Positions 891 to 54,374 of a stretch of DNA of 64,000 nt are shown here, piece by piece. Position 1 is the stretch's first letter. The number at the start of each line of letters is the position of its first letter. A program made the position numbers and the translations under genes. The notes beneath the pieces were generated by a model. It was given only the letters and a program-made list of their open reading frames with translations, was not told the DNA's origin and ran no database searches. This stretch comes from Octopus sinensis (Eukaryota): positions 78,988,001-79,052,000 of the forward strand of contig NC_043005.1 in NCBI RefSeq assembly GCF_006345805.1, in the 5' to 3' direction.

Positions 891-2018
891 TGTCACGCAT
901 AGTCAGGACATGTCGAATTCTGATAAATTCGCCGAATTCTGATAAAATGAAAACTGGGAAAAATCAAATAGATAATCAAACATAGATATATGTGGCTGCG
1001 ATGTCGAATGAGAAAGTATATCGCCGCGATTAGAATAAAAACATAACTGTCTTAAACCTTAACGCGATGCAAGATGTGAGTTTTGAATGGAAGGGCGTTG
1101 AACTTCGTGTATTTGATCCACGTTCTCAGACCTTCAATAAAGAAATTTAGCTTGATACACTGAGGTGATTGGGAGAGAAATTCCGCAGGAAAGGGCGAGA
1201 GTTTTAGTCAAAACAAATCTAGATGCAGTACCATGACCATTCTTATGCAGTAAAAGATTCTTCATTCACAGCCATCCTTCTTTACCCAAAGGAATTGGCG
1301 CCGCAGTCTTTGTTATTTATGCTTTGCTCCTAAAGTTGAAATCCATAACTTTTACGCCTTGTTACATTTATTTTGCTAGCACTCTTCTGTTAGAACAATT
1401 ATAAGCAAGTCGTCTATAAAGACGTTCTATAACACAGTCATATTACAGATAAATCATATACAAACAGTGTAACATCGTGTGAAAAAACAGTAATAAATAC
1501 GTAACGTTGAAAGAGATAGAAGGCTAAAAAATGCAAATGGATTGTAGGATGAGGTAACGAAAATTAAATATAATCTTTCTTTTTCTTGCTGATACTGTTG
1601 TTCTTTTATCTGTCCTAAAAGTCCTTCTGTCTCTTTCAACGTCACATATACAATGCTCCAAGCAAACTTATAACCTTTTGTTACGAATAAATCTATCCTG
1701 TTGAACATTATAGTAACGAAATGACACATTGTTGCGCAATCTATCAGGAGAGAAATAGTGTTACATATCCAAATTGGTTTATCCAGTTTACTCTTGAGCC
1801 GCTAATATTAGTGGATTTATAGCCAATGTATCCATGGATATGAGAAGATACAAAGGTAGCATTGACCCATCCTATGTCACGTTGAATCTCACAGGAAACT
1901 ACGTTAAGGGTACGTATGTCTTTGGAGATGTATGTATGTATGTATGTATGTATGTATGTATGTATGTATGTATGTATGTATATATGTATGTATGTATGCA
2001 TGTATGTATGTATGTATG

Positions 2019-2229
2019 CCTCTTCTATTTCTTTAATTATTATCAATTTTCCACTGAGGAGGGAGCCGGTTTCCAACAAAGATACAAAGTTCCATCTTTG
2101 GAATGTAGATATCACAGACAATTTCACATTTCGAACATCAGGAAAGTCTTGCATATTTTACTGTTACGCTCACAGATTGCACAAATTAGCCTGTTTATTT
2201 CTCTTTTTGAAAATCCCAGTTTATCCAGA
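2019..2229 (-). mobile_element. 5'-truncated 3' end of an R4/Dong-like RLE retrotransposon embedded in (TACA)n
   Basis: Minus-strand LDKLGFSKREINRL...SKICKTFLMFEM* matches the C-termini at 16255 and 52950, followed by a ~125-bp 3'UTR; (TATG)n on both sides. Confidence 0.75.
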
Positions 2230-2279
2230 GTATGTATGTATGTATGTATGTATGTATGTATGTATGTATGTATGTATGT

Positions 2280-3589: not shown

Positions 3590-5135
3590 CTTGCAGGTGA
3601 GGCCCAGTTAGAATATTCTTCTGGTCGAGTAGCCCATCCCTCCAAAAAAGTCCCGGAATAAGGGTTGTTTAAGGATGTTGAACGAACCACCCATGTTTCC
3701 AAATGTGAATTATCCAAACCGCTAAGAGTTCCTGTCAACACATGGCTATGATGCTCCCCCACTACTTCTGCTTATGATCAGAGTTGCACATATCGTCGGC
3801 CACTAAGGGACATGCTCAACTGGTTAGGGTCAAACAACTGACAAGCAAATCTGTGGTATGGAGCAGAATATTTGCTGTAGCCCATCTTTTATACCAAGAC
3901 AAAACAATGTACATGATAACAATTCTAATCAGTTACGATCAGAAGCCATGAGAGCCACTGCCTGGTACTGCATCACTTATTACTATTATTATTTTTATTA
4001 TTATTATTATTGAGTGAGAGAGCAGTTCATGCTATCAAAGTGACACTGGGGTAAAATATACGAAGACCAATATACCCATCATGACTACCCGTCTGATAAG
4101 GGTACACCAGGCACATGCATTACAACCATATGTGTGCGACATGGTGATCTCATATCAAAATAAACCGCACATGACCTTGCAGGTGGGGCCCAGTTAGAAA
4201 TTTCTTCAGGTTGAGTAGCCCATCCCGCTCAAAAGGTTCATGAATAAGGGTTGTTTAAGGATGTTGAAAGAACCACCCATGTTTCCAGAGGTGAATTATT
4301 CAAACCCCAAAGAATCCCTCTCAACACATGGCTATGATGCTCCCCCGCTACTTCTGCTCGTGATCAGAGATGCACATATCGTCAGCTACTAAGGGACATG
4401 CTCAACTGGTTAAGGTCAAACAACTGACAAGCAAATCTGTGGTATTGAGCAGAATATTTGCTGTAGCCCATCTTTTATACCAAGACAAAACAATGTACAT
4501 GATAACACTTCCAATCAGTTAAGATCAGAAGCCATGAGAGCCACTGCTTGGTACTGCATCAGGGCAATTATTATTATTATTGAGTGAGAGAGCAGTTCAT
4601 GCCATTAAAGTGACACTGAGGTAAAATATACGAAGCCCAATATACCCATCATGACTACCCGTCTGATAAGGGTACACCAGGCACATGCATCACAACCATA
4701 TGTGCGCGACATGGTGATCTCATATCAAGATAAACAGCACATGACCTTGCAGGTGGGGCCCAGTTAGAATTTTCTTCAGGTTGAGTAACCCATCACACTC
4801 AAAAGTTCCCTGAATAAGGGTGGTTTAAGGATGTTGAAAGAACCACCCATGTTTCCAGAGGTGAATTATTCAAACCCCAAAGAATCCCTCTCAACACATG
4901 GCTATGATGCTCCCCCACTACTTCTGCTCGTGATCAGAGATGTACATATTGTCAGCCACTCGGGGACATGCTCAACTGGTTAAGGTCAAACAATTGACAA
5001 GCAAATCTGTGGTATTGAGCAGAATATTTGCTGTAGCCCATCTTTTATACCAAGACAAAACAATGTACATGATAACACTTCCAGTCAGTTAATATCAGGA
5101 GCCATGAGAGCCACTGCCTGGTACTGCATCAGGGC
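3590..5135 (-). repeat. three tandem copies of a ~556-bp element separated by short (ATT)n spacers
   Basis: Units 3590-3975 (partial), 4011-4566 and 4581-5135; units 2 and 3 are ~95% identical by eye; (ATT)n continues 5136-5255. Strand inferred from the (TAA)n orientation. Confidence 0.9.
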
Positions 5136-7538: not shown

Positions 7539-7937
7539 ATATATATATACACATAGATTTACATAGGTTATACTAATCTAGTAGCGAAGAAATGACGACC
7601 CAGTACATATCAACGTAGAAAATAAAAATTATTTATTCAAGACATTTATACTATTCCTTGGCTGAGAGTTCCCTTGTTTCTATAAGTTTTGAAAAATAAT
7701 TTGTGGCAAATTCCGCTAAATTAACGCAGTAAGTGGAGTAATTGCAGAATACATATTCCCCTAATGAAATGGTTTCGTCAATCATATATCCTAGTTTTTA
7801 GCTTAATGGAGCTCTGCAGTATACTCCTCTGCATTAGATTGTGGTCTAATAGCCGAGTTTGCCAGTGGAGCTTTCTGTGATAGCCACGAGATATTATACT
7901 ACAAATGTATACATGCATACATACCTACATACATACG

Positions 7938-10558
7938 ACACAGCATCAACAACAGCGCAGTCGAGGAACAGCAGGAAAACAACAGCTCAACAGGTAAACA
8001 AATTCTTTCTAACTTTAGTTATATAAGAAACCGTTATTACAAAACTCGTTTCTCTTGGAGTTATGAATTGAATACTGATCTATTTAAGTGCTACAATGAA
8101 GCGAAACAAAACACCGCTGTTGGCTATATGAATCGATTGAAATCATATTGGGACGATCTGCATCCAGAATTAAATAATTTTACAGCGAACCAACTACACC
8201 AACAAGGAACATTTGTAGAACATAAGAAGAAGGTTAAGAACTGTAACTTTGCTAAAAAATCGAAAATTAACCTTCTTCCCAACTCTATAAAAAAGCGAAG
8301 CCCATCACGTGGTTTCGTAGCTAGCCGACATCCCAGTAGATTCTATAGCACCTGCCAGCCAAACTACATTACTGGCTCAAGTACCTGACAACTATCCCCC
8401 AACAACAATTATGGTAAGTAGCAGGCACACCTGCAACTACTGAGGTAGCAGTAGTGGCAGTCAGGATTATATGCCGGTGAAATGTGGTTTTACTAAAATT
8501 TTCTGATAAACTATTATTTTGGCTTTGAAGTGCTCATTCGAAGAGAGAGTATTCTCTGCCAAAGTAAGGAAAAAACATTAGATACGGTATTTAAAACTGT
8601 TAACGAAATTGGTGATGAGTATCTACAGCAGTGTGATGAACCCACATGCTGGCAGATTAACGCCTGTCTATATGCTCTGGCTACTATTGTAAAACAGTAC
8701 ATGAATGGCATTCAAAAAGTAAACGAAATCGAAACAACAAAAAAAGTACCATCATGGGTTTTGAAGACAGAGAAAAAGATAACTGGTTTATGGAAGACCA
8801 TCAGTCGTGTAATGATGCTTCCTGAGTGCAAGCAAGCAAATCAATATAGGTCCCTCCAATAGAAAGTGAAGGAGATAGAAATGATGTTTAGAGACTGCAA
8901 CAAGAGGACACGTACTTGCTAACAGATTATCCTCAAGCAGGAGTTAAAAGCTGTCAGTGAAAAACTCTGACATCAGAAGAGATTAACCAAGAGAAGAACA
9001 ACAACCAGAAACCAGGCAGCAGTAAAAAGTACACAGAGTCATGAGAGGAGGAAAGTCTGGAGTGAATAGGAGATTAACCAAGATACTATGTGGCTAGAAG
9101 AAAACCGAAGAAGGTATTGCTCCTGCATTCACCCAAGACATACAACATTGATGGTGAAACTCTTGCAGCTGTGATCCAGAAAATCTAGGATGGAAAATCA
9201 CCTGGAAAAGACTTGATTGTTGTATATTGGTACAAGAAGCTAACTTTCTACCGACTATGTCTTATCAATTTGTACCAGCAAGCTCTTAATAGGAACAGTA
9301 GCATAGAACACTAGAGTAGTTCTAGCAGAGACAATAGTGATCCCCAAATTCAGAACCATGCACATGGCAAAAACTACTGGCCAATTACATGCTAGAACTT
9401 AATGCTTAAACGTGTTCCGCCAGAACCATTGTGAAACCAATAACAACATCATAGCAGAACTAACGTCCGCGAAGAAGGGAGTCTGGGGATGTGCCGAGCA
9501 ATAGTTAATCAACGAAAGTGAGATGTCAAAGGTGCGAGAGCATAAGAGGAACTTATTTTCAATGTGGCTAGACTACAAAAAAGCCTTTGACTCTGTTACC
9601 CACTCATGGGTGCTAACGGCCCTTCAACTTGCTAAAGTTCCAGTGTGCATAGTCAAAGCCATAGCTAACTTGATTTCATCGTGGGCCACCACCTTGAAAT
9701 TAAATAAAAGTGTGACTGTATTATCACTGATAAAATACAGTACCGCAAGGACCTATTCCAAGGGGATAGCCTCTGTTTATGCTTTCTGTAAACCCCTAGT
9801 CATTTATGTTAAGGAAGTCTGAAGAATATCTGTCTGGTTCACAAGGGAGTAGAAATATCAAAATTACATACTGTTTCTTTGTGGATGAGTTGAAACTTTA
9901 TGCAAAGGATATACATGAGATGCAAAGGATATACATGAGATGGAGTTTGGTCAGGATAAATGTTGCTATATAATTGTGAAAAGGGGGAAAACTGTAAACC
10001 AGACTAGCAACATCTCCATTAATGCATTGACTGTTTCTCCTATATCTGACGAGGAATGATACAGGTATCTAGGGGTGGATGAAAATATATCTGACGATAG
10101 TACATATAGCAATACATCTGTCACTGAAGAATGTTACAGCCGAAAAAAGAACATTTGGACCTCAGAACTCTCCGTATTCAATAAAACAGAGACCCACAAT
10201 GTGTTTGCAGTGCCAGGACTCATAGCAACATTTGGGCTGCTGGCTGTACGCTTGATGAGATCCGAGTCATTGATCGAAAAACCCGAAAAATACTAACATG
10301 CATACATAATTTCCATATAAACAGTGACGTAGACCAACTCTGCCTAAAACGATAAGAAGGCGGTAGAGGTTTAACATCGATCCAAAATGCCTTTGAATGT
10401 CGCATCATATCCCTTCGGCAACATCTTTTAACTACCAAGTGTCGAAGTGCATCCCTTGACCAACTTTGCATACATGAGGCTGATAACATCATAAGACTTG
10501 GAAGGCAGCTCCTTGGGCAACATTCTTTGTCAGATAACCTAAAATACATGCCCCAAGC
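7938..10558 (+). mobile_element. decayed R4/Dong-like non-LTR retrotransposon (N-terminal domain and RT), 3' part missing
   Basis: N-terminal RFSWSYELNTDLFKCYNEA...GYMNRLKSYWDDLHP; RT motifs NLFSMWLDYKKAFDSVTHSW (9523 ORF), FQGDSL (~9757), FVDELKLYAK (~9878), MEFGQDKC, YRYLGVDE; many stops and frameshifts. Confidence 0.9.
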
Positions 10559-11346
10559 AGTCTAGTATATTCTTTTAATTTAACTCATTAATAAAATATA
10601 TCACTACTAACTAACTATGAATCTATATAAATAGAAATTGATATATATATATATATATTTATAGAAATACAAAATGATTTCTATATTTTCTATCCCTATA
10701 TAAGATTAGAATCCTTTGGAAAAAAACTATCTGAGGGATATTTATGTAAAATTCGCAAAGAGAATTATGGCTCTTAAATGGTAAAGAACATTAGAAATAT
10801 TTAGAGCATTAGTAGTCTCTATTCTCCCTACCCCACTAGCTTCAGCCTACTAACTTTAGCTAAAATACATTCAAATATGCCTGAGGTAAATTCCTCAAAA
10901 TGGGGATGGATTTATGACTTTGACTACCCCTTCTTCTTTCTATAAATAGAAAAAGTTCTTGTTTGTCTCCATTGAACCAAATAAAGAAACCCCCTCCCCA
11001 TTGATAAATCTAAATAACAAAGTGAACTCAGTGATAAAAAATCTACAGATGGAGAAGGACTTTCTACTACCATGTGCTTAAATATAACATTAACCCCTCT
11101 GTCTATATATCTACCCTCTTTATAATATTGACAAATGAAATATGTATAAAAATGTACATTATCCATTTAATAAAAAAAATTTTATATGTGGCTGAAGATT
11201 GCTTTACATTTTAAAACTGATGTAATACTTACATTGTTAAATAAAATGAAGTAGCATGAAACGATTGTACTATACTACCTTGGATATCCTTGTTGCTTAT
11301 TTTGATATATACATACATACATACATACATATATACATATGTATAT

Positions 11347-11444
11347 GAAGGTTCATGGCTCAGTGGTTAGAGCGTCGGGCTCACAAACATGAGGCAATGA
11401 GCTCAACTTCCGAACCGGACTGTTTGTTGTGTTCTTGAGTAAGG
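11347..11444 (+). mobile_element. 5' head of SINE family C (tRNA-like), ending at a T9 run
   Basis: catggctcagtggttagagcg (A box-like)...gagctcaacttccgaaccggactgtttgttgtgttcttgagtaagg; matches the head region of the family C copy at 16535-16850. Confidence 0.75.
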
Positions 11445-11453
11445 TTTTTTTTT

Positions 11454-13225
11454 ATGGCTCCCTCACAGACAGTCCAACTATGATCAGTGAGATGCTGAAT
11501 GACCAGTTCAAAAGTGTCTTTACCACCCCGTTGGAACACAGACAAGTGAACGAACCAGTGGACTTCTTTGCCGCCTCACCTATAACCAGCGAGGCGGTTA
11601 CAATAGAATGTATTGACATTAGTGAAAAAGATATCCTACTAGCCATAGATGAAGTGGACACAAACTCAGCTGCTGGTCCAGACAGTTTCCCAGCCATCCT
11701 CCTCGAAGCGTGTAAGCATGCCCTGGCAAAACCCCTCAAGATTCTCTTCCAGAGCTTTCTTGCGAATGGCAAACTGCCAAGCAAGCTGAAGGAGAGAATA
11801 ATATGCCCAACACATAAAGGGGGAATTAGAGCAGATGCCAAAAACTATAGGCCTATCTCTCTGACTTCACACATCAGCAAAGTCATGGAACGAATAGTTT
11901 CCGACCAGGTAGGAGCTCTTACAGCATTATGACTGGGTGTTGAGGCAGTTACTCAACAAATCAAATGTGGACGTAATCTACCTTGATTTTGCAAAAGCTT
12001 TTGACAAGGTGGATCATCGTATGATATGCCACAAACTACGTGACCTCGGCATAGCTGGAAAACTTGGAGTGTGGTTGCATGACTTCCTGAAAGATAGGAG
12101 TCAGGCAGTGGTGGTTAATGGAGCCACCTCTATGAAGACACAAATAGTGAGCGGTGTTCCACAGCGCACTGTCTTGGGACCACTGCTTTTTATAGTGGCC
12201 CTCTTAGATATGCCTTCAAGTGCCCGGATAGCCACTCTGGCCAGCTATGCAGACGATACGAAAGTCTCGCAGAAAATACAGAACCCCAGCGATGTTGCAC
12301 ACTTGCAGCAGAATTTGGACTCAATCAACAGATGGGCTGAGGATAATAATATGCAGTTTAATGCTGAAAAATTCCAGGACCTGCGCTACCAGCATCCAAA
12401 ACTGAATATTAAACTTACAGGATACACCGGTCCACAGGGAATTTCAAGTGCACATTACCAGGATGGCGACAAAATGCAGACGACTGGCTGGGTGGATCCT
12501 AAGTGCACATTACCAGGATGGCGACAAAATGCAGACGACTGGCTGGGTGGATCCTAAGAACATTCAGAACCAGAGATAAGGAAACCATGATGGTCCTCTG
12601 GTGGACATTCGTCCTCAGTCGCCTGGATTACTGCTCACAGCTATGGTCACCCACCAGTGTAAAATTAACAGCGGACCTTGAATCAATCCAGAGAAGATTC
12701 ACAAAGAAGATCATCTCTTTGCAACAGCTCAGCTACTGGGAAAGGTTGAAACAGCTAAGACTCTACTCCCGTGAGAGAAGACGGGAGAGGTATGCAGTAA
12801 TATATGTCTGGAAGATCCTGGAAGGAATTGTGCCAAATTTTGGCATTGTAAGCTACACTAATGCTAGAACGGGACGACACTGCATAGTGCCAAAGATCCC
12901 AGCAATGCCATCACGCTTCAGGATCAGCTTCTGCAACAGCCTGGGTTTCAAGGGCCCACAGCTTTTTAATATTCTCCCAAAGAGTCTGAAGAACTTGCAC
13001 AAAGTGGATGTAGCGGTTTTTAAATCAAAACTGGACATCCTCCTGTCAAGAGTCCCAGATGAACCTACCTCACGGCAGGAGGTGCAAATGAGAGTAGCTA
13101 TATCAAACTCCATTTTTCACCAAGTGCCACATATTAGACGAGGTTCGTCGTAATAAAAGTGTAGCACAAGACGGCGGTGCATCAGCATGGCCGCAGCTCT
13201 GAGCTGAAACTAGGAAAAAAAAAAA
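11454..13225 (+). mobile_element. 5'-truncated CR1/L2-group LINE (RT and C-terminus, 3'UTR, A11 tail)
   Basis: NYRPISLTSHISKVMERIV, IYLDFAKAFDKVDH, GVPQRTVLGPLLF, YADD, LSYWERLKQLRLYS, GPQLFNILP; internal deletions and a 55-bp duplication; A run at 13215-13225. Confidence 0.93.
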
Positions 13226-13976
13226 TATATATATATTTATAAATTGAATCAAGCAGTACTCAGAGTAAGAATACTATATGCCAATAAGATGTCCTGAGGA
13301 GTAGTTTCTGTTCATTATTGACCATACCATTATATGCGTAACTATAAAAAGATAAACGACTGTACAATGTATTAAATTAGTATGCGAATTATAATGAATG
13401 ACAATGACGTTACTGAGTATGGTTTATGAAACAGCCGCAATTATAAGTTACAAATATTATTCACCGCTCACTTCTTAATTATGCATACATACATACATAC
13501 ATACATACATACATACATACATGCATACATACATACATACATACATACATACATACATACATGCATACGTATATGTGTGTGTATACTCAAATTTCTGAGT
13601 GTGAATTTGGGAGTTTGTACAGCCTACTACATGTATGAAAAAAATTCTATATGTATACATGTATTTCATGTATGACGTGACATGGTTATGTATCTATGCA
13701 CTTTAGTTCATCCTATGATGTATATGTATGTGCATCTACGTATGTAATACATAAATACGTACATATGTATACATATATATATATATATATGCATGTATCT
13801 TCAAAAGCGAGGCGCTACCATTATGCTCCTGCCTACCGAGATAATACCTAACACCCGAAACCATGTGTCTGCGATTTCAACCCCTCAATCAAATAGCCAC
13901 ACACACACAACACACGCACACACACCATACATGCATGCATACATACATAAAGAAGCATTTACATATATGTATACGT

Positions 13977-16183: not shown

Positions 16184-16405
16184 GTGCAGATTTGTATGTT
16201 TTAAGTATGTATTCTCATGCATATAATTGCATATCTAGACATGCTCATATATATTTAAATGCTAAACTTCTGCAAAGGCTTACAGATTTTTACAGTACGG
16301 GTGATGGATCGGATTTGTAGTCTTCGAATTAACTTTCTCCTTTCTGATTTTGAGAAGCCAAATTTCTGAAGATTGCAGTTTAGACACCGTGTTACATATC
16401 CAAAG
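16184..16405 (-). mobile_element. 5'-truncated 3' end of the (TACA)n-associated R4/Dong-like family
   Basis: GYVTRCLNCNLQKFGFSKSERRKLIRRLQIRSITRTVKICKPLQKFSI*; 3'UTR aligns with 52835-52950; ends in the (TATG)n tract 16098-16183. Confidence 0.85.
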
Positions 16406-19935: not shown

Positions 19936-19958
19936 CATTAATAATAATAATAATAATA

Positions 19959-19999
<41 letters not shown>

Positions 20000-20030
20000 G
20001 TAATAATAATAATAATGATAATGGTAATAA

Positions 20031-20855
20031 TCGGATGTTAAAACTTGTCTCAAAACATGAAAACAAGAAAGCATCATACTCAGTAACAAAACAAGCAAAG
20101 AAATATCTAAGTGAATTCCGAATACAACAAATTCCAGAATCAGACATACTAGAAACAGGCACAGAAAAAGCTAAGCGTATGAAAACCCGTGCTAAAACTG
20201 CTGCCTAAGATATTCTTACTGATAAATAGCAAGAAAAACCTCTCAATGGCAAATACCCCATGAGAACTAATAATGTTGATATTGACAAAGGCATTACCCA
20301 TGAATGGTTTGTGGCTTCTGGGTTAAAATCAGAAACAGAAGGGTTTATCGTAACAGTCCAAGATCAATGCCTACCTACAAGAACGGCAGCTGTCCAACAT
20401 ATTTCTGCCGACAACAAAATAAAACCTTTGATCATGTTGTCTCTATATGTAGTCTTCTTGCGCCTACAGAGCATCTCAACAGGTATGATAGAGCAGCGCA
20501 GTATATTCACTGGGTAATTTGCAAAAACTTGAACTTGCTCCATGATAAAAACTGGTGGGAACACAAATGATAGCAAAAGGGGTTGATTGCTACCTAGCTC
20601 AGATACCAGGAAACCCCAAAATGGCAGAAATTCAAAAGATAGTGCTCATAGGAACTGCCATATCCTACGTAAAATTTTTAAACGAACTCATAATTTTCTT
20701 GTTTTCTTAAAATTTTACTAGAACAATACTATGCACAAAACTAAATATACGACATCCTAGGCATAACACCAACATGGACTTCTAACTTGGTGTCTCTTGA
20801 GGTCTCTGGGTAAGACTTGGAGTCAACTTGTGCAAATACAAAGCAAAAGTCAAGC

Positions 20856-20858
<3 letters not shown>
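20031..20858 (+). mobile_element. 5'-truncated Dong-type (R4 clade) element inside (TAA)n
   Basis: GLKSETEGFIVTVQDQCLPT, zinc knuckle CRQQNKTFDHVVSIC, C-terminal EIQKIVLIGTA, 3'UTR; (TAA)n at 19938-20030 and 20858-20915. Confidence 0.9.
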
Positions 20859-20916
<58 letters not shown>

Positions 20917-43404: not shown

Positions 43405-43652
43405 AAGGCGCCCTTTTAAAGCCTAGCTAGGCTCATGGGCCCAGGTTCCCGGTTTCTATGGAGTATGCGTTGGCCAGCTGGACGGAACGCCAGTCCATCG
43501 CAGCGTTACTCATTTTTGTCAGCTGAGTGGACTGGAGGAACGTGAAATGAAGTGTTTTGCTCAAGAACACAACGCGTGGCCCGGTCCAGAATTCGAAACC
43601 ACAATCTTACGATCATGATGCTGATACCCTAACCAGTAAGCCACGCGCCTCC
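43405..43652 (-). mobile_element. SINE family C with tail type i
   Basis: Head ggaggcgcgtggcttactggttaggg..., CORE-like ttcttgagcaaaacacttcatttcacgttcctccagtccactcagctg, then ctgcgatggactggcg...gaaaccgggaacc. Confidence 0.85.
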
Positions 43653-52423: not shown

Positions 52424-52667
52424 AACCTTCTCGAGTCATGCTGACTGATATGGGCCGCTCTTCCCGGTTTCAGTGGCGTATATATTCCCCACCTTTAGGG
52501 GAAACTGATCCATCGCAGGGTCATTTATTCTTGTCAGCTGAGTGGACTGGTGCAATGTGAAATGAAGTGTTTTGCTCAAGAGCATAACACGTTGCATAGT
52601 CCAGGAGTTGAAACCACAATCTTACGATCACGTGTCCAACACCCTGGCCACCAACCCACGCGCCTCC
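52424..52667 (-). mobile_element. SINE family C with tail type i
   Basis: Same head and CORE-like block as 43405-43652, then cctgcgatggatcag...gaaaccgggaagagcggccc. Confidence 0.8.
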
Positions 52668-52834
52668 ACTATGTATGTATGTATGTATGTATGTATGTAT
52701 GTATGTATGTATGTTTGTATGTATGTATGTTTGTACGTATGTATGTATGTATGTGTGTATGTTTGTTTGTTTGTATGTATGCATGTATGCATGTATGTAT
52801 GTATGTATGTATGCATGTATGTATGCATGTATAC

Positions 52835-54070
52835 GTGCAGATTTGTATGTTTTTTATGTATGTATTCTTATGCATATACTTCCATATCTAGACATTCTCA
52901 TATATACTAAAATGATAAACTTTGAAAAGTTTTGCAAAATTTTACAGTCTCAGTGATGGATAGGATCTATACTCTTCGAATCAGCTTTCTCTGGTTTTAA
53001 GAAGCCTAATTTCTCAAGATTACCATATACCAGGGCGCCAATAATTACAGATATAAACCTGAACTTGTAGTTTGGATAGTGTAACTTCAGATTTTTCAAT
53101 AGTTCAGCATTGGTGTTCTCTTTTCCACTGATCTTCAGCTTTATGTTAACATCCGCTGGGCAGCTGATTTCCACAACTGTACATAGTTTCTCTTCTCGAT
53201 CACAAATCCTTATATCAGGTCTATTGTGTTTACATTTTCTTGAGGTTTTCACTCGGACATTCCACCAATATTCCTTTTTATTATGAGTGGCTATGGCTTC
53301 GACCATACTTTAGCTTCTTATCTTTTGTCCTTGGGGTTGTCCTTTCGACCGTTCTCTTCATACAGTATCCTAGCTACAGCATCATATCTCATCGGTAGAT
53401 AATACTGTGATGATATTTTTGGACAACTGCTTATGATGCGGGTCATATATTCAGTTTTAACTCCACAAAGTCTGCTTCAGTTGTTACATTTTACAGATTT
53501 TCCAGCACATCTGTCCCTTTTTTTACTCAAGCTATTTGGTTGATATTTCCTGTTCTTGGATTGAAAATGCATACTTTTCACATTGGGAGGTTCTAATTTG
53601 GTTGTTGGTGCAAGAGATACCGCTTTTGTAATCGATGTTATTATAATCTCTGAGCTTTCTTATAACATATCCATGCATGGTCTTCTGTTCATATATGCTC
53701 ATCCTTTATCTGATTATACGTTGTGTTAGAGTCGTGCATTTTCTTTGGTGCATGTATTTAAGTTTATCAGACAAGGAATGCTGTTCAAGTAGCTCCCTTC
53801 TAATTCTTATGATGTCATCAGCCTCATGTATGCAAACTTCATAAAAGGATGCACTTCAACACTTGGTAGTTAACAGATGTTGCTGAAGGGATATGGTGTG
53901 ACATCCAAAGACATTTTGGATCGACGATAAGCCTCTGCAGTTTTGTTTTCATTTTAGGTAGAGTCGGTCTACGTCAGAGTTTATGTGGAATTTATATGTG
54001 CTTGTTAGTATTTTCTAGGTTTTCACATCAATGGTTCGGTTCTCATCAAGCGTCCAACAAAGCAGCCCAA
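52835..54070 (-). mobile_element. 3' part of an R4/Dong-like element: zinc knuckle, RLE endonuclease, 3'UTR, (TACA)n tail
   Basis: SRLCGVKTEYMTRIISSC (degenerate CCHC), HNRPDIRICDREEKLCTVVEISCP (PD..D/ExK-type RLE); 53740-54070 is ~78% identical by eye to 10235-10558. Confidence 0.9.
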
Positions 54071-54374
54071 ATGTACGTACGTATGGATGGATAGACGGAT
54101 GGATGGATTGATGAATAGATGGATGGATACCGTGAAAAGGCTTGAAGACACGTAGCGTTGGAGTTAGTATGTTGACATCATTATTGTTTTTTCATGAATT
54201 CGATTCCAGATTTGGTGAGGCAATGTGTACTTGATAATTCTTCTACATTGCAATTTTCAATCAGTTCAGCTGAAATTGTGTACAAACTCACTGATAGGAA
54301 TCTCTCTGCATCTGTTTGTCTGTCTTTCTGTCTCTCTCTTTACTCTCTCCAGATGCCACGTCCTCCCTGCTAAA

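What the first reader, a model, noticed from the sequence alone, without database searches (positions are those of the whole stretch)
52671..54090. R4/Dong-like RLE retrotransposon lineage that appears to target (TACA)n microsatellites
Seen: four related copies (2019-2229, 7938-10558, 16184-16405, 52835-54070) all abut (TACA)n on the element sense strand. All three 3' ends run directly into long (TACA)n tracts, and this copy retains the RLE core HNRPDIRICDREEKLCTVVEISCP. Established: R4-clade elements are sequence-specific, with R4 in 28S rDNA and Dong in (TAA)n. Inference: this is a lineage with a tetranucleotide target that may also lengthen the very abundant (TACA)n tracts of this genome. 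I know of no described (TACA)n-specific member but could not search.
Basis: partly seen in the sequence, partly recalled or inferred. Interest (0 to 1): 0.8.

Follow-up and report, generated by a model that had tools for sequence, protein, structure and literature searches.

The report
Retrotransposon lineage that targets (ACAT)n microsatellites
The window holds four decayed copies of a Dong-like jumping gene whose whole lineage, seen here and in many other animals' DNA, inserts in one orientation into (ACAT)n = (TACA)n simple repeats. This is a target I found in no paper for this group, but it is a variation on a known habit, not a new kind of element.

Summary
Four decayed copies from at least two families lie at 2019-2229, 7938-10558, 16184-16405 and 52835-54074. 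They belong to a non-LTR retrotransposon with a reverse transcriptase, a CCHC motif and a restriction-like endonuclease (RLE). All three preserved 3' ends run straight into 86-163 bp of (ACAT)n on the sense strand.

The repeat is a target, not only a tail. A 5'-truncated copy has 50 bp of (ACAT)n on its 5' side, and the near-full-length copy starts at ...ACATAC|G. That junction register recurs in three intact relatives.

Relatives fetched from metagenomes and genome assemblies, including the octopod Argonauta hians, carry (ACAT)n at both ends. A sister set carries (ACTT)n. More distant relatives, including one in the insect Diaphorina citri, carry (TAA)n at both ends, the classical Dong target. 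The tetranucleotide-flanked elements form a clade with 100% bootstrap support, and the window's copies fall inside it. A (TAA)n-flanked Dong-type fragment in the same window serves as an internal control.

No paper I could search describes this specificity; Repbase and Dfam could not be checked. The idea that insertions lengthen the tracts gets no support. I score it as a new target variant of a known kind, of moderate interest.

The parts
1928..2018 (-). (ACAT)n array, read on the minus strand, abutting the 3' end of copy 1
   Evidence: TRF period 4, 22.8 copies; sequence read
2019..2229 (-). Copy 1: a 5'-truncated remnant holding the last ~35 codons plus a ~100-nt 3' UTR, from a second family of the lineage
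   Evidence: The C-terminal peptide LDKLGFSKREINRL..SKICKTFLMF matches the extreme C-termini of family proteins: 38.8 bits against a shuffled maximum of 27.8
2230..2279 (-). (ACAT)n array on the 5' side of truncated copy 1. This is the key evidence within the window that the repeat is a target and not a tail
   Evidence: TRF 12.5 perfect copies; junction read
7905..7937 (+). Imperfect (ACAT)n directly upstream of the 5' end of copy 2; junction ...CATACATAC|GACAC
   Evidence: The same ACATAC|G register occurs in L003, L086 and L088
7938..10558 (+). Copy 2. It has a genuine 5' end, an N-terminal GYM.R..S.W domain, and the RT through the thumb (profile positions 6-871 of 1153). It carries many frameshifts and stops and is cut off at 10558 before the CCHC motif and the RLE
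   Evidence: Profile hits in three frames; tblastn to P0006 residues 11-764; Pfam RVT_1 below its cut-off; 5' UTR motif GCGCAGTCG shared with L003
16096..16183 (-). (ACAT)n array abutting the 3' end of copy 3
   Evidence: TRF period 4, 22.2 copies; sequence
16184..16405 (-). Copy 3: a 5'-truncated remnant with the last ~50 codons plus the 3' UTR, from the same family as copy 4. Its 5' side runs into degenerate TGTA/(TG)n
   Evidence: 80.9% identity to copy 4; profile positions 1100-1151, E = 1.4e-8
52670..52834 (-). (ACAT)n array of about 41 units abutting the 3' end of copy 4
   Evidence: TRF period 4, 40.8 copies, 88% matches; sequence
52835..54074 (-). Copy 4: 5'-truncated, running from profile position ~760 to the C-terminus plus a ~75-nt 3' UTR. 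It covers the thumb/linker, the CCHC motif and the RLE. Its 5' side is only a degenerate TACGTACGTACA
   Evidence: profile 1016-1106, E = 1e-31
53321..53476 (-). CCHC zinc-knuckle region of copy 4 (C..C...........H....C....Y...RYD), interrupted by one stop codon
   Evidence: Profile positions 960-1008, E = 1.2e-13; aligns to the CRhC...H..C motif of R2
53157..53228 (-). RLE core HNRPDIRICDREEKLCTVVEISCP (PD...E motif)
   Evidence: ORF 52950-53306; invariant P1038 and D1039 in family alignment A1; aligns to the R2 RLE kPDli...vvDvtv
19939..20915 (+). Internal control: a 5'-truncated classical Dong-type fragment (20032-20857) lying between (TAA)n arrays 19939-20031 and 20858-20915
   Evidence: tblastn best hit to the ORF of L013, from the (TAA)n-flanked group, E = 6e-16; sequence; TRF

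Best explanation
The four sequences are dead copies, from at least two families, of a single-ORF non-LTR retrotransposon. The ORF encodes an N-terminal Myb-like region, a reverse transcriptase, a CCHC knuckle and a C-terminal restriction-like endonuclease (RLE). The elements belong to a deep clade that is sister to classical (TAA)n-specific Dong elements.

Members of this clade integrate orientation-specifically into (ACAT)n·(ATGT)n microsatellites. Some sublineages use (ACTT)n instead.

Inferred mechanism, by analogy with R2 and Dong:
1. The protein recognises the repeat and the RLE nicks the (ATGT)n strand.
2. The freed 3' OH primes reverse transcription of the element RNA. The RNA's 3' end is a short 3' UTR followed by (ACAU)n, which can anneal to the nicked target.
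3. Many copies end up 5'-truncated.
4. The other strand is cut and joined in a preferred register, ...ACATAC|G.

Shown here: the anatomy of the copies, repeats on both flanks, a fixed orientation, the clade structure, and a covarying 3' UTR hairpin in intact relatives.

Inferred, not shown: which strand is nicked, whether the protein or RNA annealing sets the specificity, and whether any copy in this genome is active.
For: 1. Window anatomy. All three preserved 3' ends abut (ACAT)n. c1 has 50 bp of (ACAT)n on its 5' side, and c2 starts at ACATAC|G.

2. Relatives with repeats on both sides or on the observed side:
- L002: (TACA)4 at the 5' contig end and (ACAT)11 at the 3' end, around an intact 1149-aa ORF.
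- L003: at least 104 and 112 bp. L004: at least 76 and 70 bp.
- L083, Argonauta hians: 58 bp at the 5' side, ACAT followed by (AC)n at the 3' side.
- L086: (ACAT)41 at the 5' side. L088: 60 and 32 bp. L089: at least 72 bp at the 3' side.
- The flank always reads ACAT on the sense strand, never ATGT.

3. Repeated hits in one array. L088 carries a truncated copy from a different family followed by (ACAT)55, upstream of the full-length element. L084 carries three elements separated by (ACTT)n.

4. Phylogeny. A neighbour-joining tree on 694 columns with 100 bootstraps gives 100% support to the tetranucleotide clade. The window's stitched pseudo-protein lies inside it. Tips flanked by ACAT occur in all five subclades and tips flanked by ACTT in two.

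5. Link to Dong.
- 28 of the fetched distant relatives have (AAT)n next to them.
- The Diaphorina citri element has (AAT)n of 102 and 120 bp on its two sides.
- P0006 and that element share 33% identity over 941 aa, E = 4e-151.
- Dong targets (TAA)n in insects, molluscs and cnidarians (PMC7998251).

6. Internal control. A Dong-type fragment sits in (TAA)n at 19939-20915 of the same window.

7. The RT-CCHC-RLE region aligns with solved R2 proteins, E = 4e-52.

8. A 3' UTR hairpin (CTT, 6-bp stem, 5-nt loop, CGG) lies 40-65 nt before the tail in nine elements. All 54 cells pair and all 6 pairs show compensatory changes; controls with the partners slid by 1-3 columns pair at 39% or less.
Against: - Two of the four window copies (c3, c4) have only 12-20 bp of degenerate repeat on the 5' side.
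- Most relatives come from short contigs that end inside the repeats. Tract lengths and the DNA beyond the repeats are therefore unseen, and assemblers tend to break contigs at microsatellites, which favours seeing repeats at contig ends.
- No empty (pre-insertion) site was examined.
- L087 has no 3' repeat within 3 kb. L001 carries a 15-bp satellite where the (ACAT)n tail would be.
- No named R4, Dong, Rex6 or HERO reference sequence was available, so the clade assignment is indirect.
- The window pseudo-protein is a stitched chimera of c2 and c4 on a long branch. Its exact subclade has only 70% support.
- The hairpin segments were picked by eye. No such hairpin is evident in the decayed window copies.
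- No HDV-like ribozyme was detected.
Confidence: 0.85

Rival explanations
1. The (ACAT)n is only a templated or slippage-made 3' tail, like the microsatellite tails of CR1, L2 or I elements, and the element inserts without sequence preference.
For: In the window the 3' tracts (91, 86 and 163 bp) are always longer than the 5' tracts (50, ~33, under 20 and ~12 bp). Two of the four copies have no convincing 5' repeat.
Against: Truncated copy c1 has 50 bp of perfect (ACAT)n on its 5' side. Full-length relatives carry 58-164 bp of (ACAT)n directly upstream of their 5' ends, in a shared register. A tail cannot explain repeats upstream of 5'-truncated copies. The parallel pattern holds for (ACTT)n and (TAA)n relatives.
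Confidence: 0.04
2. Insertion is into (ACAT)n, but the protein does not read the sequence. The (ACAU)n at the RNA 3' end simply anneals to breaks or nicks that arise in (ATGT)n tracts, so the tail chooses the target and the target in turn re-templates the tail.
For: ACAT- and ACTT-flanked families are interleaved in the tree, which suggests easy switching. One element sits in a composite ACAT/ACTT/ACAT array (L087). The 3' junctions are in variable register.
Against: The RLE catalytic block is invariant across the clade. The 5' junction register ACATAC|G recurs in four elements. The orientation is strictly fixed. In R2, the nearest studied system, protein domains read the target. None of this excludes a mixed mechanism.
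Confidence: 0.1
3. The association is passive. Elements and tetranucleotide repeats both accumulate in the same AT-rich, repeat-dense DNA, or the microsatellites arose secondarily next to the elements.
For: The window is extremely rich in microsatellites: 159 TRF rows in 64 kb. An unrelated SINE-like repeat also abuts microsatellites.
Against: - The junctions are exact.
- The expected chance rate is about 1e-3 per end.
- The repeat type follows the phylogeny: ACAT, ACTT or TAA.
- The CR1-like LINE in the same window ends in an A-rich tail, not in (ACAT)n.
- Most (ACAT)n arrays in the window have no element beside them.
Confidence: 0.01
4. The targeting is real, but the clade is not R4/Dong in Repbase's sense. 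It would be filed under HERO, some of whose families are reported to be microsatellite-specific, or as a clade of its own.
For: Kojima and Jurka note that some HERO families target microsatellites, citing a Repbase Report on a leech (PMC4640811). I had no named reference sequences. The clade shares only about 30% identity with the (TAA)n group.
Against: - Homology with (TAA)n-flanked elements, insect ones included, is collinear over the full length: query residues ~15-1147.
- The N-terminus lacks zinc fingers and has a GYMKR..LW motif, as described for the R4/Dong Myb-like domain (PMC7998251).
- Cephalopod RLE-encoding LINEs are annotated mostly as Dong-R4 (PMC13282606, PMC8967140).
Confidence: 0.15

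Closest known systems
Dong (Bombyx mori) and Dong-like elements of the R4/Dong group
   Same: Both have a single ORF with a zinc-finger-free N-terminus, RT, CCHC motif and C-terminal RLE. Both insert in one orientation into a microsatellite, so the same repeat lies on both sides. Copies are often 5'-truncated. The proteins are collinear: 33% identity over 941 aa to a (TAA)n-flanked Diaphorina citri element.
   Different: The target is the tetranucleotide (ACAT)n, or (ACTT)n in sister families, instead of (TAA)n. The elements form a separate clade with 100% bootstrap support. The 5' HDV-like ribozyme shown experimentally for Dong (PMC3774820) was not detected here. The same scan also missed it in the five (TAA)n-group loci scanned (L011, L013, L016, L018, L023), so that result is uninformative.
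R4 (Ascaris and other nematodes; 28S rDNA-specific)
   Same: It belongs to the same group as Dong, has the same domain order, and is sequence-specific.
   Different: R4 targets one site in the 28S rRNA gene, not a simple repeat. No R4 sequence was available for comparison.
Waldo (WaldoAg1, WaldoAg2, WaldoFs1; R1 clade)
   Same: It targets (ACAY)n microsatellites, which include (ACAT)n (PMC3812793). The same class of target has therefore been adopted independently.
   Different: Waldo uses an N-terminal apurinic/apyrimidinic-type endonuclease and belongs to the unrelated R1 clade. The elements here use a C-terminal RLE.
R2 (28S rDNA; solved structures 9nl3, 9dou, 8gh6)
   Same: The RT, CCHC motif and RLE align over about 770 residues, E = 4e-52. 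R2 is the mechanistic model for target-primed reverse transcription with recognition of a 3' UTR RNA.
   Different: R2 has N-terminal zinc-finger and Myb domains and a single rDNA target. It is much more distant than the (TAA)n Dong group.
Togen (NeSL-related, (TG)n) and microsatellite-specific HERO families
   Same: These are RLE-encoding LINEs with microsatellite targets (PMC4640811).
   Different: They belong to other clades and use other repeats. The relationship to HERO could not be tested.

Membership tests
RLE-type non-LTR retrotransposon (R2 group in the broad sense) | Reverse transcriptase domain of the non-LTR type | tested here: met
   In intact relatives Pfam RVT_1 scores E = 1e-26. 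In window copy c2 it scores 20.9 bits, below the cut-off because of decay. Family profile hits run along c2 at up to E = 7e-28.
RLE-type non-LTR retrotransposon (R2 group in the broad sense) | CCHC motif and a PD-(D/E)xK restriction-like endonuclease C-terminal to the RT, with no N-terminal APE | tested here: met
   Invariant C959, C962, H971, C976 and P1038, D1039 in alignment A1. The region aligns to the CCHC motif and RLE of R2. Window c4 carries both, at 53321-53476 and 53157-53228. No APE match was found by Pfam.
R4/Dong group | Groups with named R4, Dong and Rex6 references in an RT phylogeny, apart from HERO, NeSL, CRE and R2 | not testable with these tools
   No Repbase or GenBank reference sequences could be fetched. 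Indirect support: the clade is sister to elements flanked by (TAA)n, including insect ones.
R4/Dong group | N-terminus without zinc fingers but with a diverged Myb/SANT-like domain (PMC7998251) | tested here: inconclusive
   A conserved N-terminal block F.WT.ELN.D....Y..A......GYMKR.K.LWD..HP is present in the clade and in window c2. There are no cysteine/histidine finger motifs and no Pfam hit. I could not run an HHpred-type search against Myb profiles.
R4/Dong group | HDV-like self-cleaving ribozyme at the 5' end (shown for R4 and Dong, PMC3774820) | tested here: inconclusive
   Rfam covariance models found none at E <= 1 in eight tetranucleotide-clade loci, or at gathering thresholds in the window. 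They also found none in the five (TAA)n-group loci scanned (L011, L013, L016, L018, L023). A conserved 5' motif GGACGTG was seen, but it was not tested for a ribozyme fold.
Microsatellite-specific (target-specific) LINE | The same repeat on both the 5' and 3' sides, including around 5'-truncated copies | tested here: met
   Window c1, and L002, L003, L004 and L088. L083 has the repeat on the 5' side and a degenerate version on the 3' side. The L084 fragment lies in (ACTT)n.
Microsatellite-specific (target-specific) LINE | Fixed orientation relative to the repeat strand | tested here: met
   Every flank reads ACAT (or ACTT, or AAT) on the element's sense strand.
Microsatellite-specific (target-specific) LINE | Empty target sites are uninterrupted repeat arrays; flanks are enriched over random positions genome-wide | not testable with these tools
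   The source genome and its alleles or orthologues are not available. Only a within-window estimate of chance could be made.
Waldo (R1 clade, ACAY-specific) | N-terminal APE endonuclease and an RT of the R1 clade | tested here: not met
   The endonuclease is a C-terminal RLE, and the closest solved relatives are R2 proteins.

The most novel reading that the evidence does not exclude
This is an undescribed, ancient and widespread clade of Dong-like elements. Its target has switched repeatedly between (ACAT)n and (ACTT)n, which differ by one base in the unit, while a covarying 3' UTR hairpin has been kept. If so, it is a natural series for working out how RLE-encoding LINEs read and re-assign their DNA targets. 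Through tail templating, the clade might also contribute materially to the abundance of these tetranucleotide repeats in some invertebrate genomes.
Probability: 0.3. Interest if true: 0.65.

Novelty: new variant of a known kind. Interest (0 to 1): 0.5.

Why it matters
Target-specific RLE-encoding LINEs, with R2 foremost, are now being engineered for site-directed gene insertion. How they change targets in nature is known from only a few cases.

A deep clade next to Dong that uses (ACAT)n, with sister families on (ACTT)n and outgroups on (TAA)n, offers many intact natural variants. They could be used to map which protein or RNA features set the target.

There is also a practical point for genome annotation. 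Such elements sit inside microsatellites. Short-read assemblies break there, and methods that call insertion polymorphisms are likely to miss them.

The finding does not change the picture of what these elements are.

Tried and rejected
- The first metagenome scan, with the single protein P0006, found no relative. The repeat with the 17-sequence alignment succeeded.
- Pfam has no model that recognises the RLE or the N-terminal domain.
- Rfam found no ribozyme or other RNA family. The only hits were microsatellite artefacts such as mir-297.
- I could not identify the host species. The best named hit for the Dong-like ORF is Argonauta hians at 38%. For the neighbouring CR1-like ORF it is a crab at 44%, and nothing nearly identical is in the protein collection. 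The loci showed no useful nucleotide similarity to the window.
- The family profile HMM did not detect copy 1. A short-query BLAST with a shuffle control did.
- Folding the 3' UTRs of the window copies gave nothing better than shuffles. The hairpin claim therefore rests on intact relatives only.
- I checked whether other (ACAT)n arrays in the window hide very short element ends, and found none.
- I checked whether the CR1-like LINE ends in the (CATA)n array at 13484. It does not; it ends near 13215 in an A-rich tail.
- I considered the idea that insertions lengthen the tracts and set it aside as unsupported.
- I considered writing my own structure-descriptor search for HDV-like ribozymes. I dropped it because I had no positive control to calibrate it.
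Full report
**What is in the window**

The window is AT-rich (34.7% GC) and packed with microsatellites: 159 rows from Tandem Repeats Finder in 64 kb. The finding's region holds a 163-bp (TATG)n array at 52670-52832. It is followed by about 1.24 kb of decayed coding sequence on the minus strand.

That sequence translates, across three frames and several stops, into three parts:
- the thumb/linker region;
- a CCHC knuckle;

**The four copies are related**

- Copy 4, 53745-54074, matches copy 2, 10556-10228, at 82.7% identity on opposite strands.
- Copy 4, 52840-53021, matches copy 3, 16189-16374, at 80.9% identity.
- Copy 1 (2019-2229) has no nucleotide similarity to the others. It encodes the last ~35 residues of the same kind of protein.
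  - Its peptide hits the extreme C-termini of family members at up to 38.8 bits, against a maximum of 27.8 for 200 shuffles.
  - 32 of those hits end within 15 aa of the subject's C-terminus.
  - It therefore represents a second family.
- A profile built from intact relatives lights up copy 2 from profile position 6 to 871 and copy 4 from about 760 to 1106.
  - Copy 2 is the 5' two-thirds of an element, cut off at 10558.
  - Copy 4 is the 3' third.

**Junctions**

All three preserved 3' ends run directly into (ACAT)n on the sense strand, for 91, 86 and 163 bp.

On the 5' side:
- truncated copy 1 has 50 bp of perfect (ACAT)n (2230-2279);
- copy 2 has about 33 bp of imperfect repeat, ending ...CATACATAC|GACAC;
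- copies 3 and 4 have only degenerate stretches of 12-20 bp.

The window has about 16 (ACAT)n arrays covering 1.4% of it. The chance of one end landing within 5 bp of the correct side of an array in the correct orientation is about 1.4e-3, or about 3e-9 for three ends.

Most (ACAT)n arrays in the window have no element beside them. The repeats therefore exist independently of the element.

**Relatives elsewhere**

A search with a stitched pseudo-protein found 439 relatives at up to about 40% identity. Many are intact ORFs of 1130-1200 aa. The only named close one comes from the octopod Argonauta hians.

I then looked at the DNA around these relatives.

| Locus | Flanks seen |
|---|---|
| L002 (4,040-bp contig, 1149-aa ORF) | begins with (TACA)4, ends with (ACAT)11 |
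| L003, L004 (closest of 80 metagenome loci) | (ACAT)n at both ends |
| L005-L008 | (ACTT)n |
| 28 more distant loci (mostly 28-33% identity) | (AAT)n = (TAA)n beside them, several on both sides |
| L083 (Argonauta hians, full ORF) | 58 bp (ACAT)n upstream; ACAT then (AC)n downstream |
| L086 | (ACAT)41 upstream |
| L088 | (ACAT)n on both sides |
| L089 | (ACAT)n downstream |
| L087 | composite ACAT/ACTT/ACAT array upstream |
| L084 | three elements in a row separated by (ACTT)n |

Three further points:
- L088 also carries a truncated copy from a different family, followed by (ACAT)55, upstream of the full-length element.
- The flanks always read ACAT, ACTT or AAT on the element's sense strand.
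- Four elements share the 5' junction register ACATAC|G: L003, L086, L088 and window copy 2. Copy 2 also shares the 5' UTR motif GCGCAGTCG with L003, so its 5' end is genuine.

**Phylogeny and classification**

A neighbour-joining tree (694 columns, 100 bootstraps) splits the family into two groups. One is flanked by (TAA)n. The other is a tetranucleotide clade with 100% support, and the window's pseudo-protein lies inside it. Its exact subclade has only 70% support. It sits on a long branch because the sequence is decayed and stitched from two copies.

With the later look-ups added, tips flanked by ACAT occur in all five subclades and tips flanked by ACTT in two. ACAT is therefore probably ancestral, and ACTT probably arose more than once.

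The (TAA)n group includes a Diaphorina citri element with (AAT)n of 102 and 120 bp on its two sides. That element is collinear with the ACAT-flanked P0006 at 33% identity over 941 aa. According to PMC7998251, (TAA)n is the Dong target in most insects, molluscs and cnidarians, so the nearest known relatives are Dong elements.

The family profile also aligns through the RT, CCHC motif and RLE to solved R2 proteins, at a much weaker E = 4e-52.

I could not obtain named R4, Dong, Rex6 or HERO sequences. The formal clade assignment therefore stays indirect. A HERO or separate-clade label cannot be excluded, because some HERO families are reported to be microsatellite-specific (PMC4640811).

**Internal control**

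The same window holds a 5'-truncated classical Dong-type fragment at 20032-20857. It lies exactly between (TAA)n arrays at 19939-20031 and 20858-20915. Two sister lineages thus sit side by side, each in its own repeat.

**Mechanism**

The anatomy fits target-primed reverse transcription as worked out for R2:
1. The (ATGT)n strand is nicked.
2. The nick primes reverse transcription on an RNA ending in a short 3' UTR plus (ACAU)n.
3. Copies are frequently 5'-truncated.
4. The 5' end is joined in a preferred register.

In intact relatives I found a conserved 3' UTR hairpin 40-65 nt before the tail: CTT, a 6-bp stem, a 5-nt loop, then CGG. It occurs in both ACAT and ACTT lineages. In nine sequences all 54 cells pair and all six pairs show compensatory changes. 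Controls with the partners slid by 1-3 columns pair at 39% or less. The segments were chosen by eye, which inflates this somewhat. A likely role is as the RNA handle for the reverse transcriptase, as in R2.

The data cannot separate a target set by the protein from a target set by annealing of the RNA tail. The interleaving of ACAT and ACTT families, and the composite array in L087, keep the annealing model alive.

No HDV-like ribozyme was detected. The same scan also missed one in the five (TAA)n-group loci scanned (L011, L013, L016, L018, L023), so this says nothing. The ribozyme has been shown experimentally for Bombyx Dong (PMC3774820).

**The lengthening idea**

Arrays next to copies (86-163 bp) are within the range of arrays without copies (40-197 bp). 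In relatives the 3' tract is not consistently the longer one. The idea remains untested.

**Novelty**

Six full-text literature searches, plus reading of the relevant papers, turned up no description of an (ACAT)n- or (ACTT)n-specific element of the RLE type. What is known:
- Dong on (TAA)n;
- Waldo, an unrelated APE-type R1-clade element, on (ACAY)n (PMC3812793);
- Togen on (TG)n, and some HERO families on microsatellites (PMC4640811);
- Dong-R4 elements as abundant and recently active in octopus genomes, with no target stated (PMC13282606, PMC9115989, PMC8967140).

Repbase Reports and Dfam could not be searched, and such a specificity may well be recorded there.

I rate this a new target variant of a known kind. 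It is solid and of real use to people who study target-specific LINEs, but it would not surprise them in principle.

Noticed in passing
window 19939-20915: A 5'-truncated, internally deleted classical Dong-type fragment (20032-20857, + strand) lies between two (TAA)n arrays. It shows a second, (TAA)n-specific sister lineage in the same genome.
   Followed up: yes
L005-L008; L084 2388-8896: A sister set of families is flanked by (ACTT)n on both sides. In L084 three elements lie in a row, separated by (ACTT)n arrays.
   Followed up: partly
L002 ~3935-3965; L003, L004, L083, L088, L005, L008, L084 (40-65 nt before the tail): A conserved 3' UTR hairpin: CTT, a 6-bp stem, a 5-nt loop, then CGG, with full covariation (54 of 54 cells paired, 6 of 6 pairs with compensatory changes). 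It is not recognisable in the decayed window copies.
   Followed up: partly
L001 1-11978: A 3.09-kb unit is repeated at least four times in tandem. The unit consists of (ACAT)7, a 5'-truncated element (aa 344-1146) and a 15-bp satellite (ATATTGTCTGGGTCT)n. A truncated copy has apparently been amplified as part of a larger satellite.
   Followed up: no
L087 2786-2959: The 5' flank of this element is a composite array: (ACAT)n, then (ACTT)14, then (ACAT)7. Both target repeats occur in one tract.
   Followed up: no
window 52480-52669 and 43494-43652: Two copies (81% identity) of a tRNA-like SINE-type repeat on the minus strand. In both, the head end directly abuts a microsatellite: the (ACAT)n array shared with copy 4, and a (TG)n array. 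A further SINE-like head with a box-A motif lies at 11345-11420, next to (ACAT)n at 11305-11339.
   Followed up: partly
window 11429-13220: An unrelated CR1/jockey-like LINE on the + strand, with long open ORF pieces. It ends in an A-rich/(AT) tail near 13215. Inside it is a perfect 55-bp x 2.1 tandem duplication at 12446-12558.
   Followed up: partly
window 9900-9942: A perfect 20-bp x 2.2 tandem duplication inside the RT region of copy 2. It is one of the frame-breaking lesions.
   Followed up: no
L018 84-167: A tRNA covariance-model hit (30.3 bits, just above the gathering score) at the 5' end of an element of the (TAA)n group, flanked by (AAAT)n on its 5' side and (AAT)n on its 3' side.
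   Followed up: no
L003, L004, L088, L005, L006: first 20-45 nt of the element: A shared 5' UTR motif, GGACGTG (GGATGTG in L006), close to the 5' junction. It might belong to a 5' processing structure such as the ribozyme known from Dong, but I did not test that.
   Followed up: no
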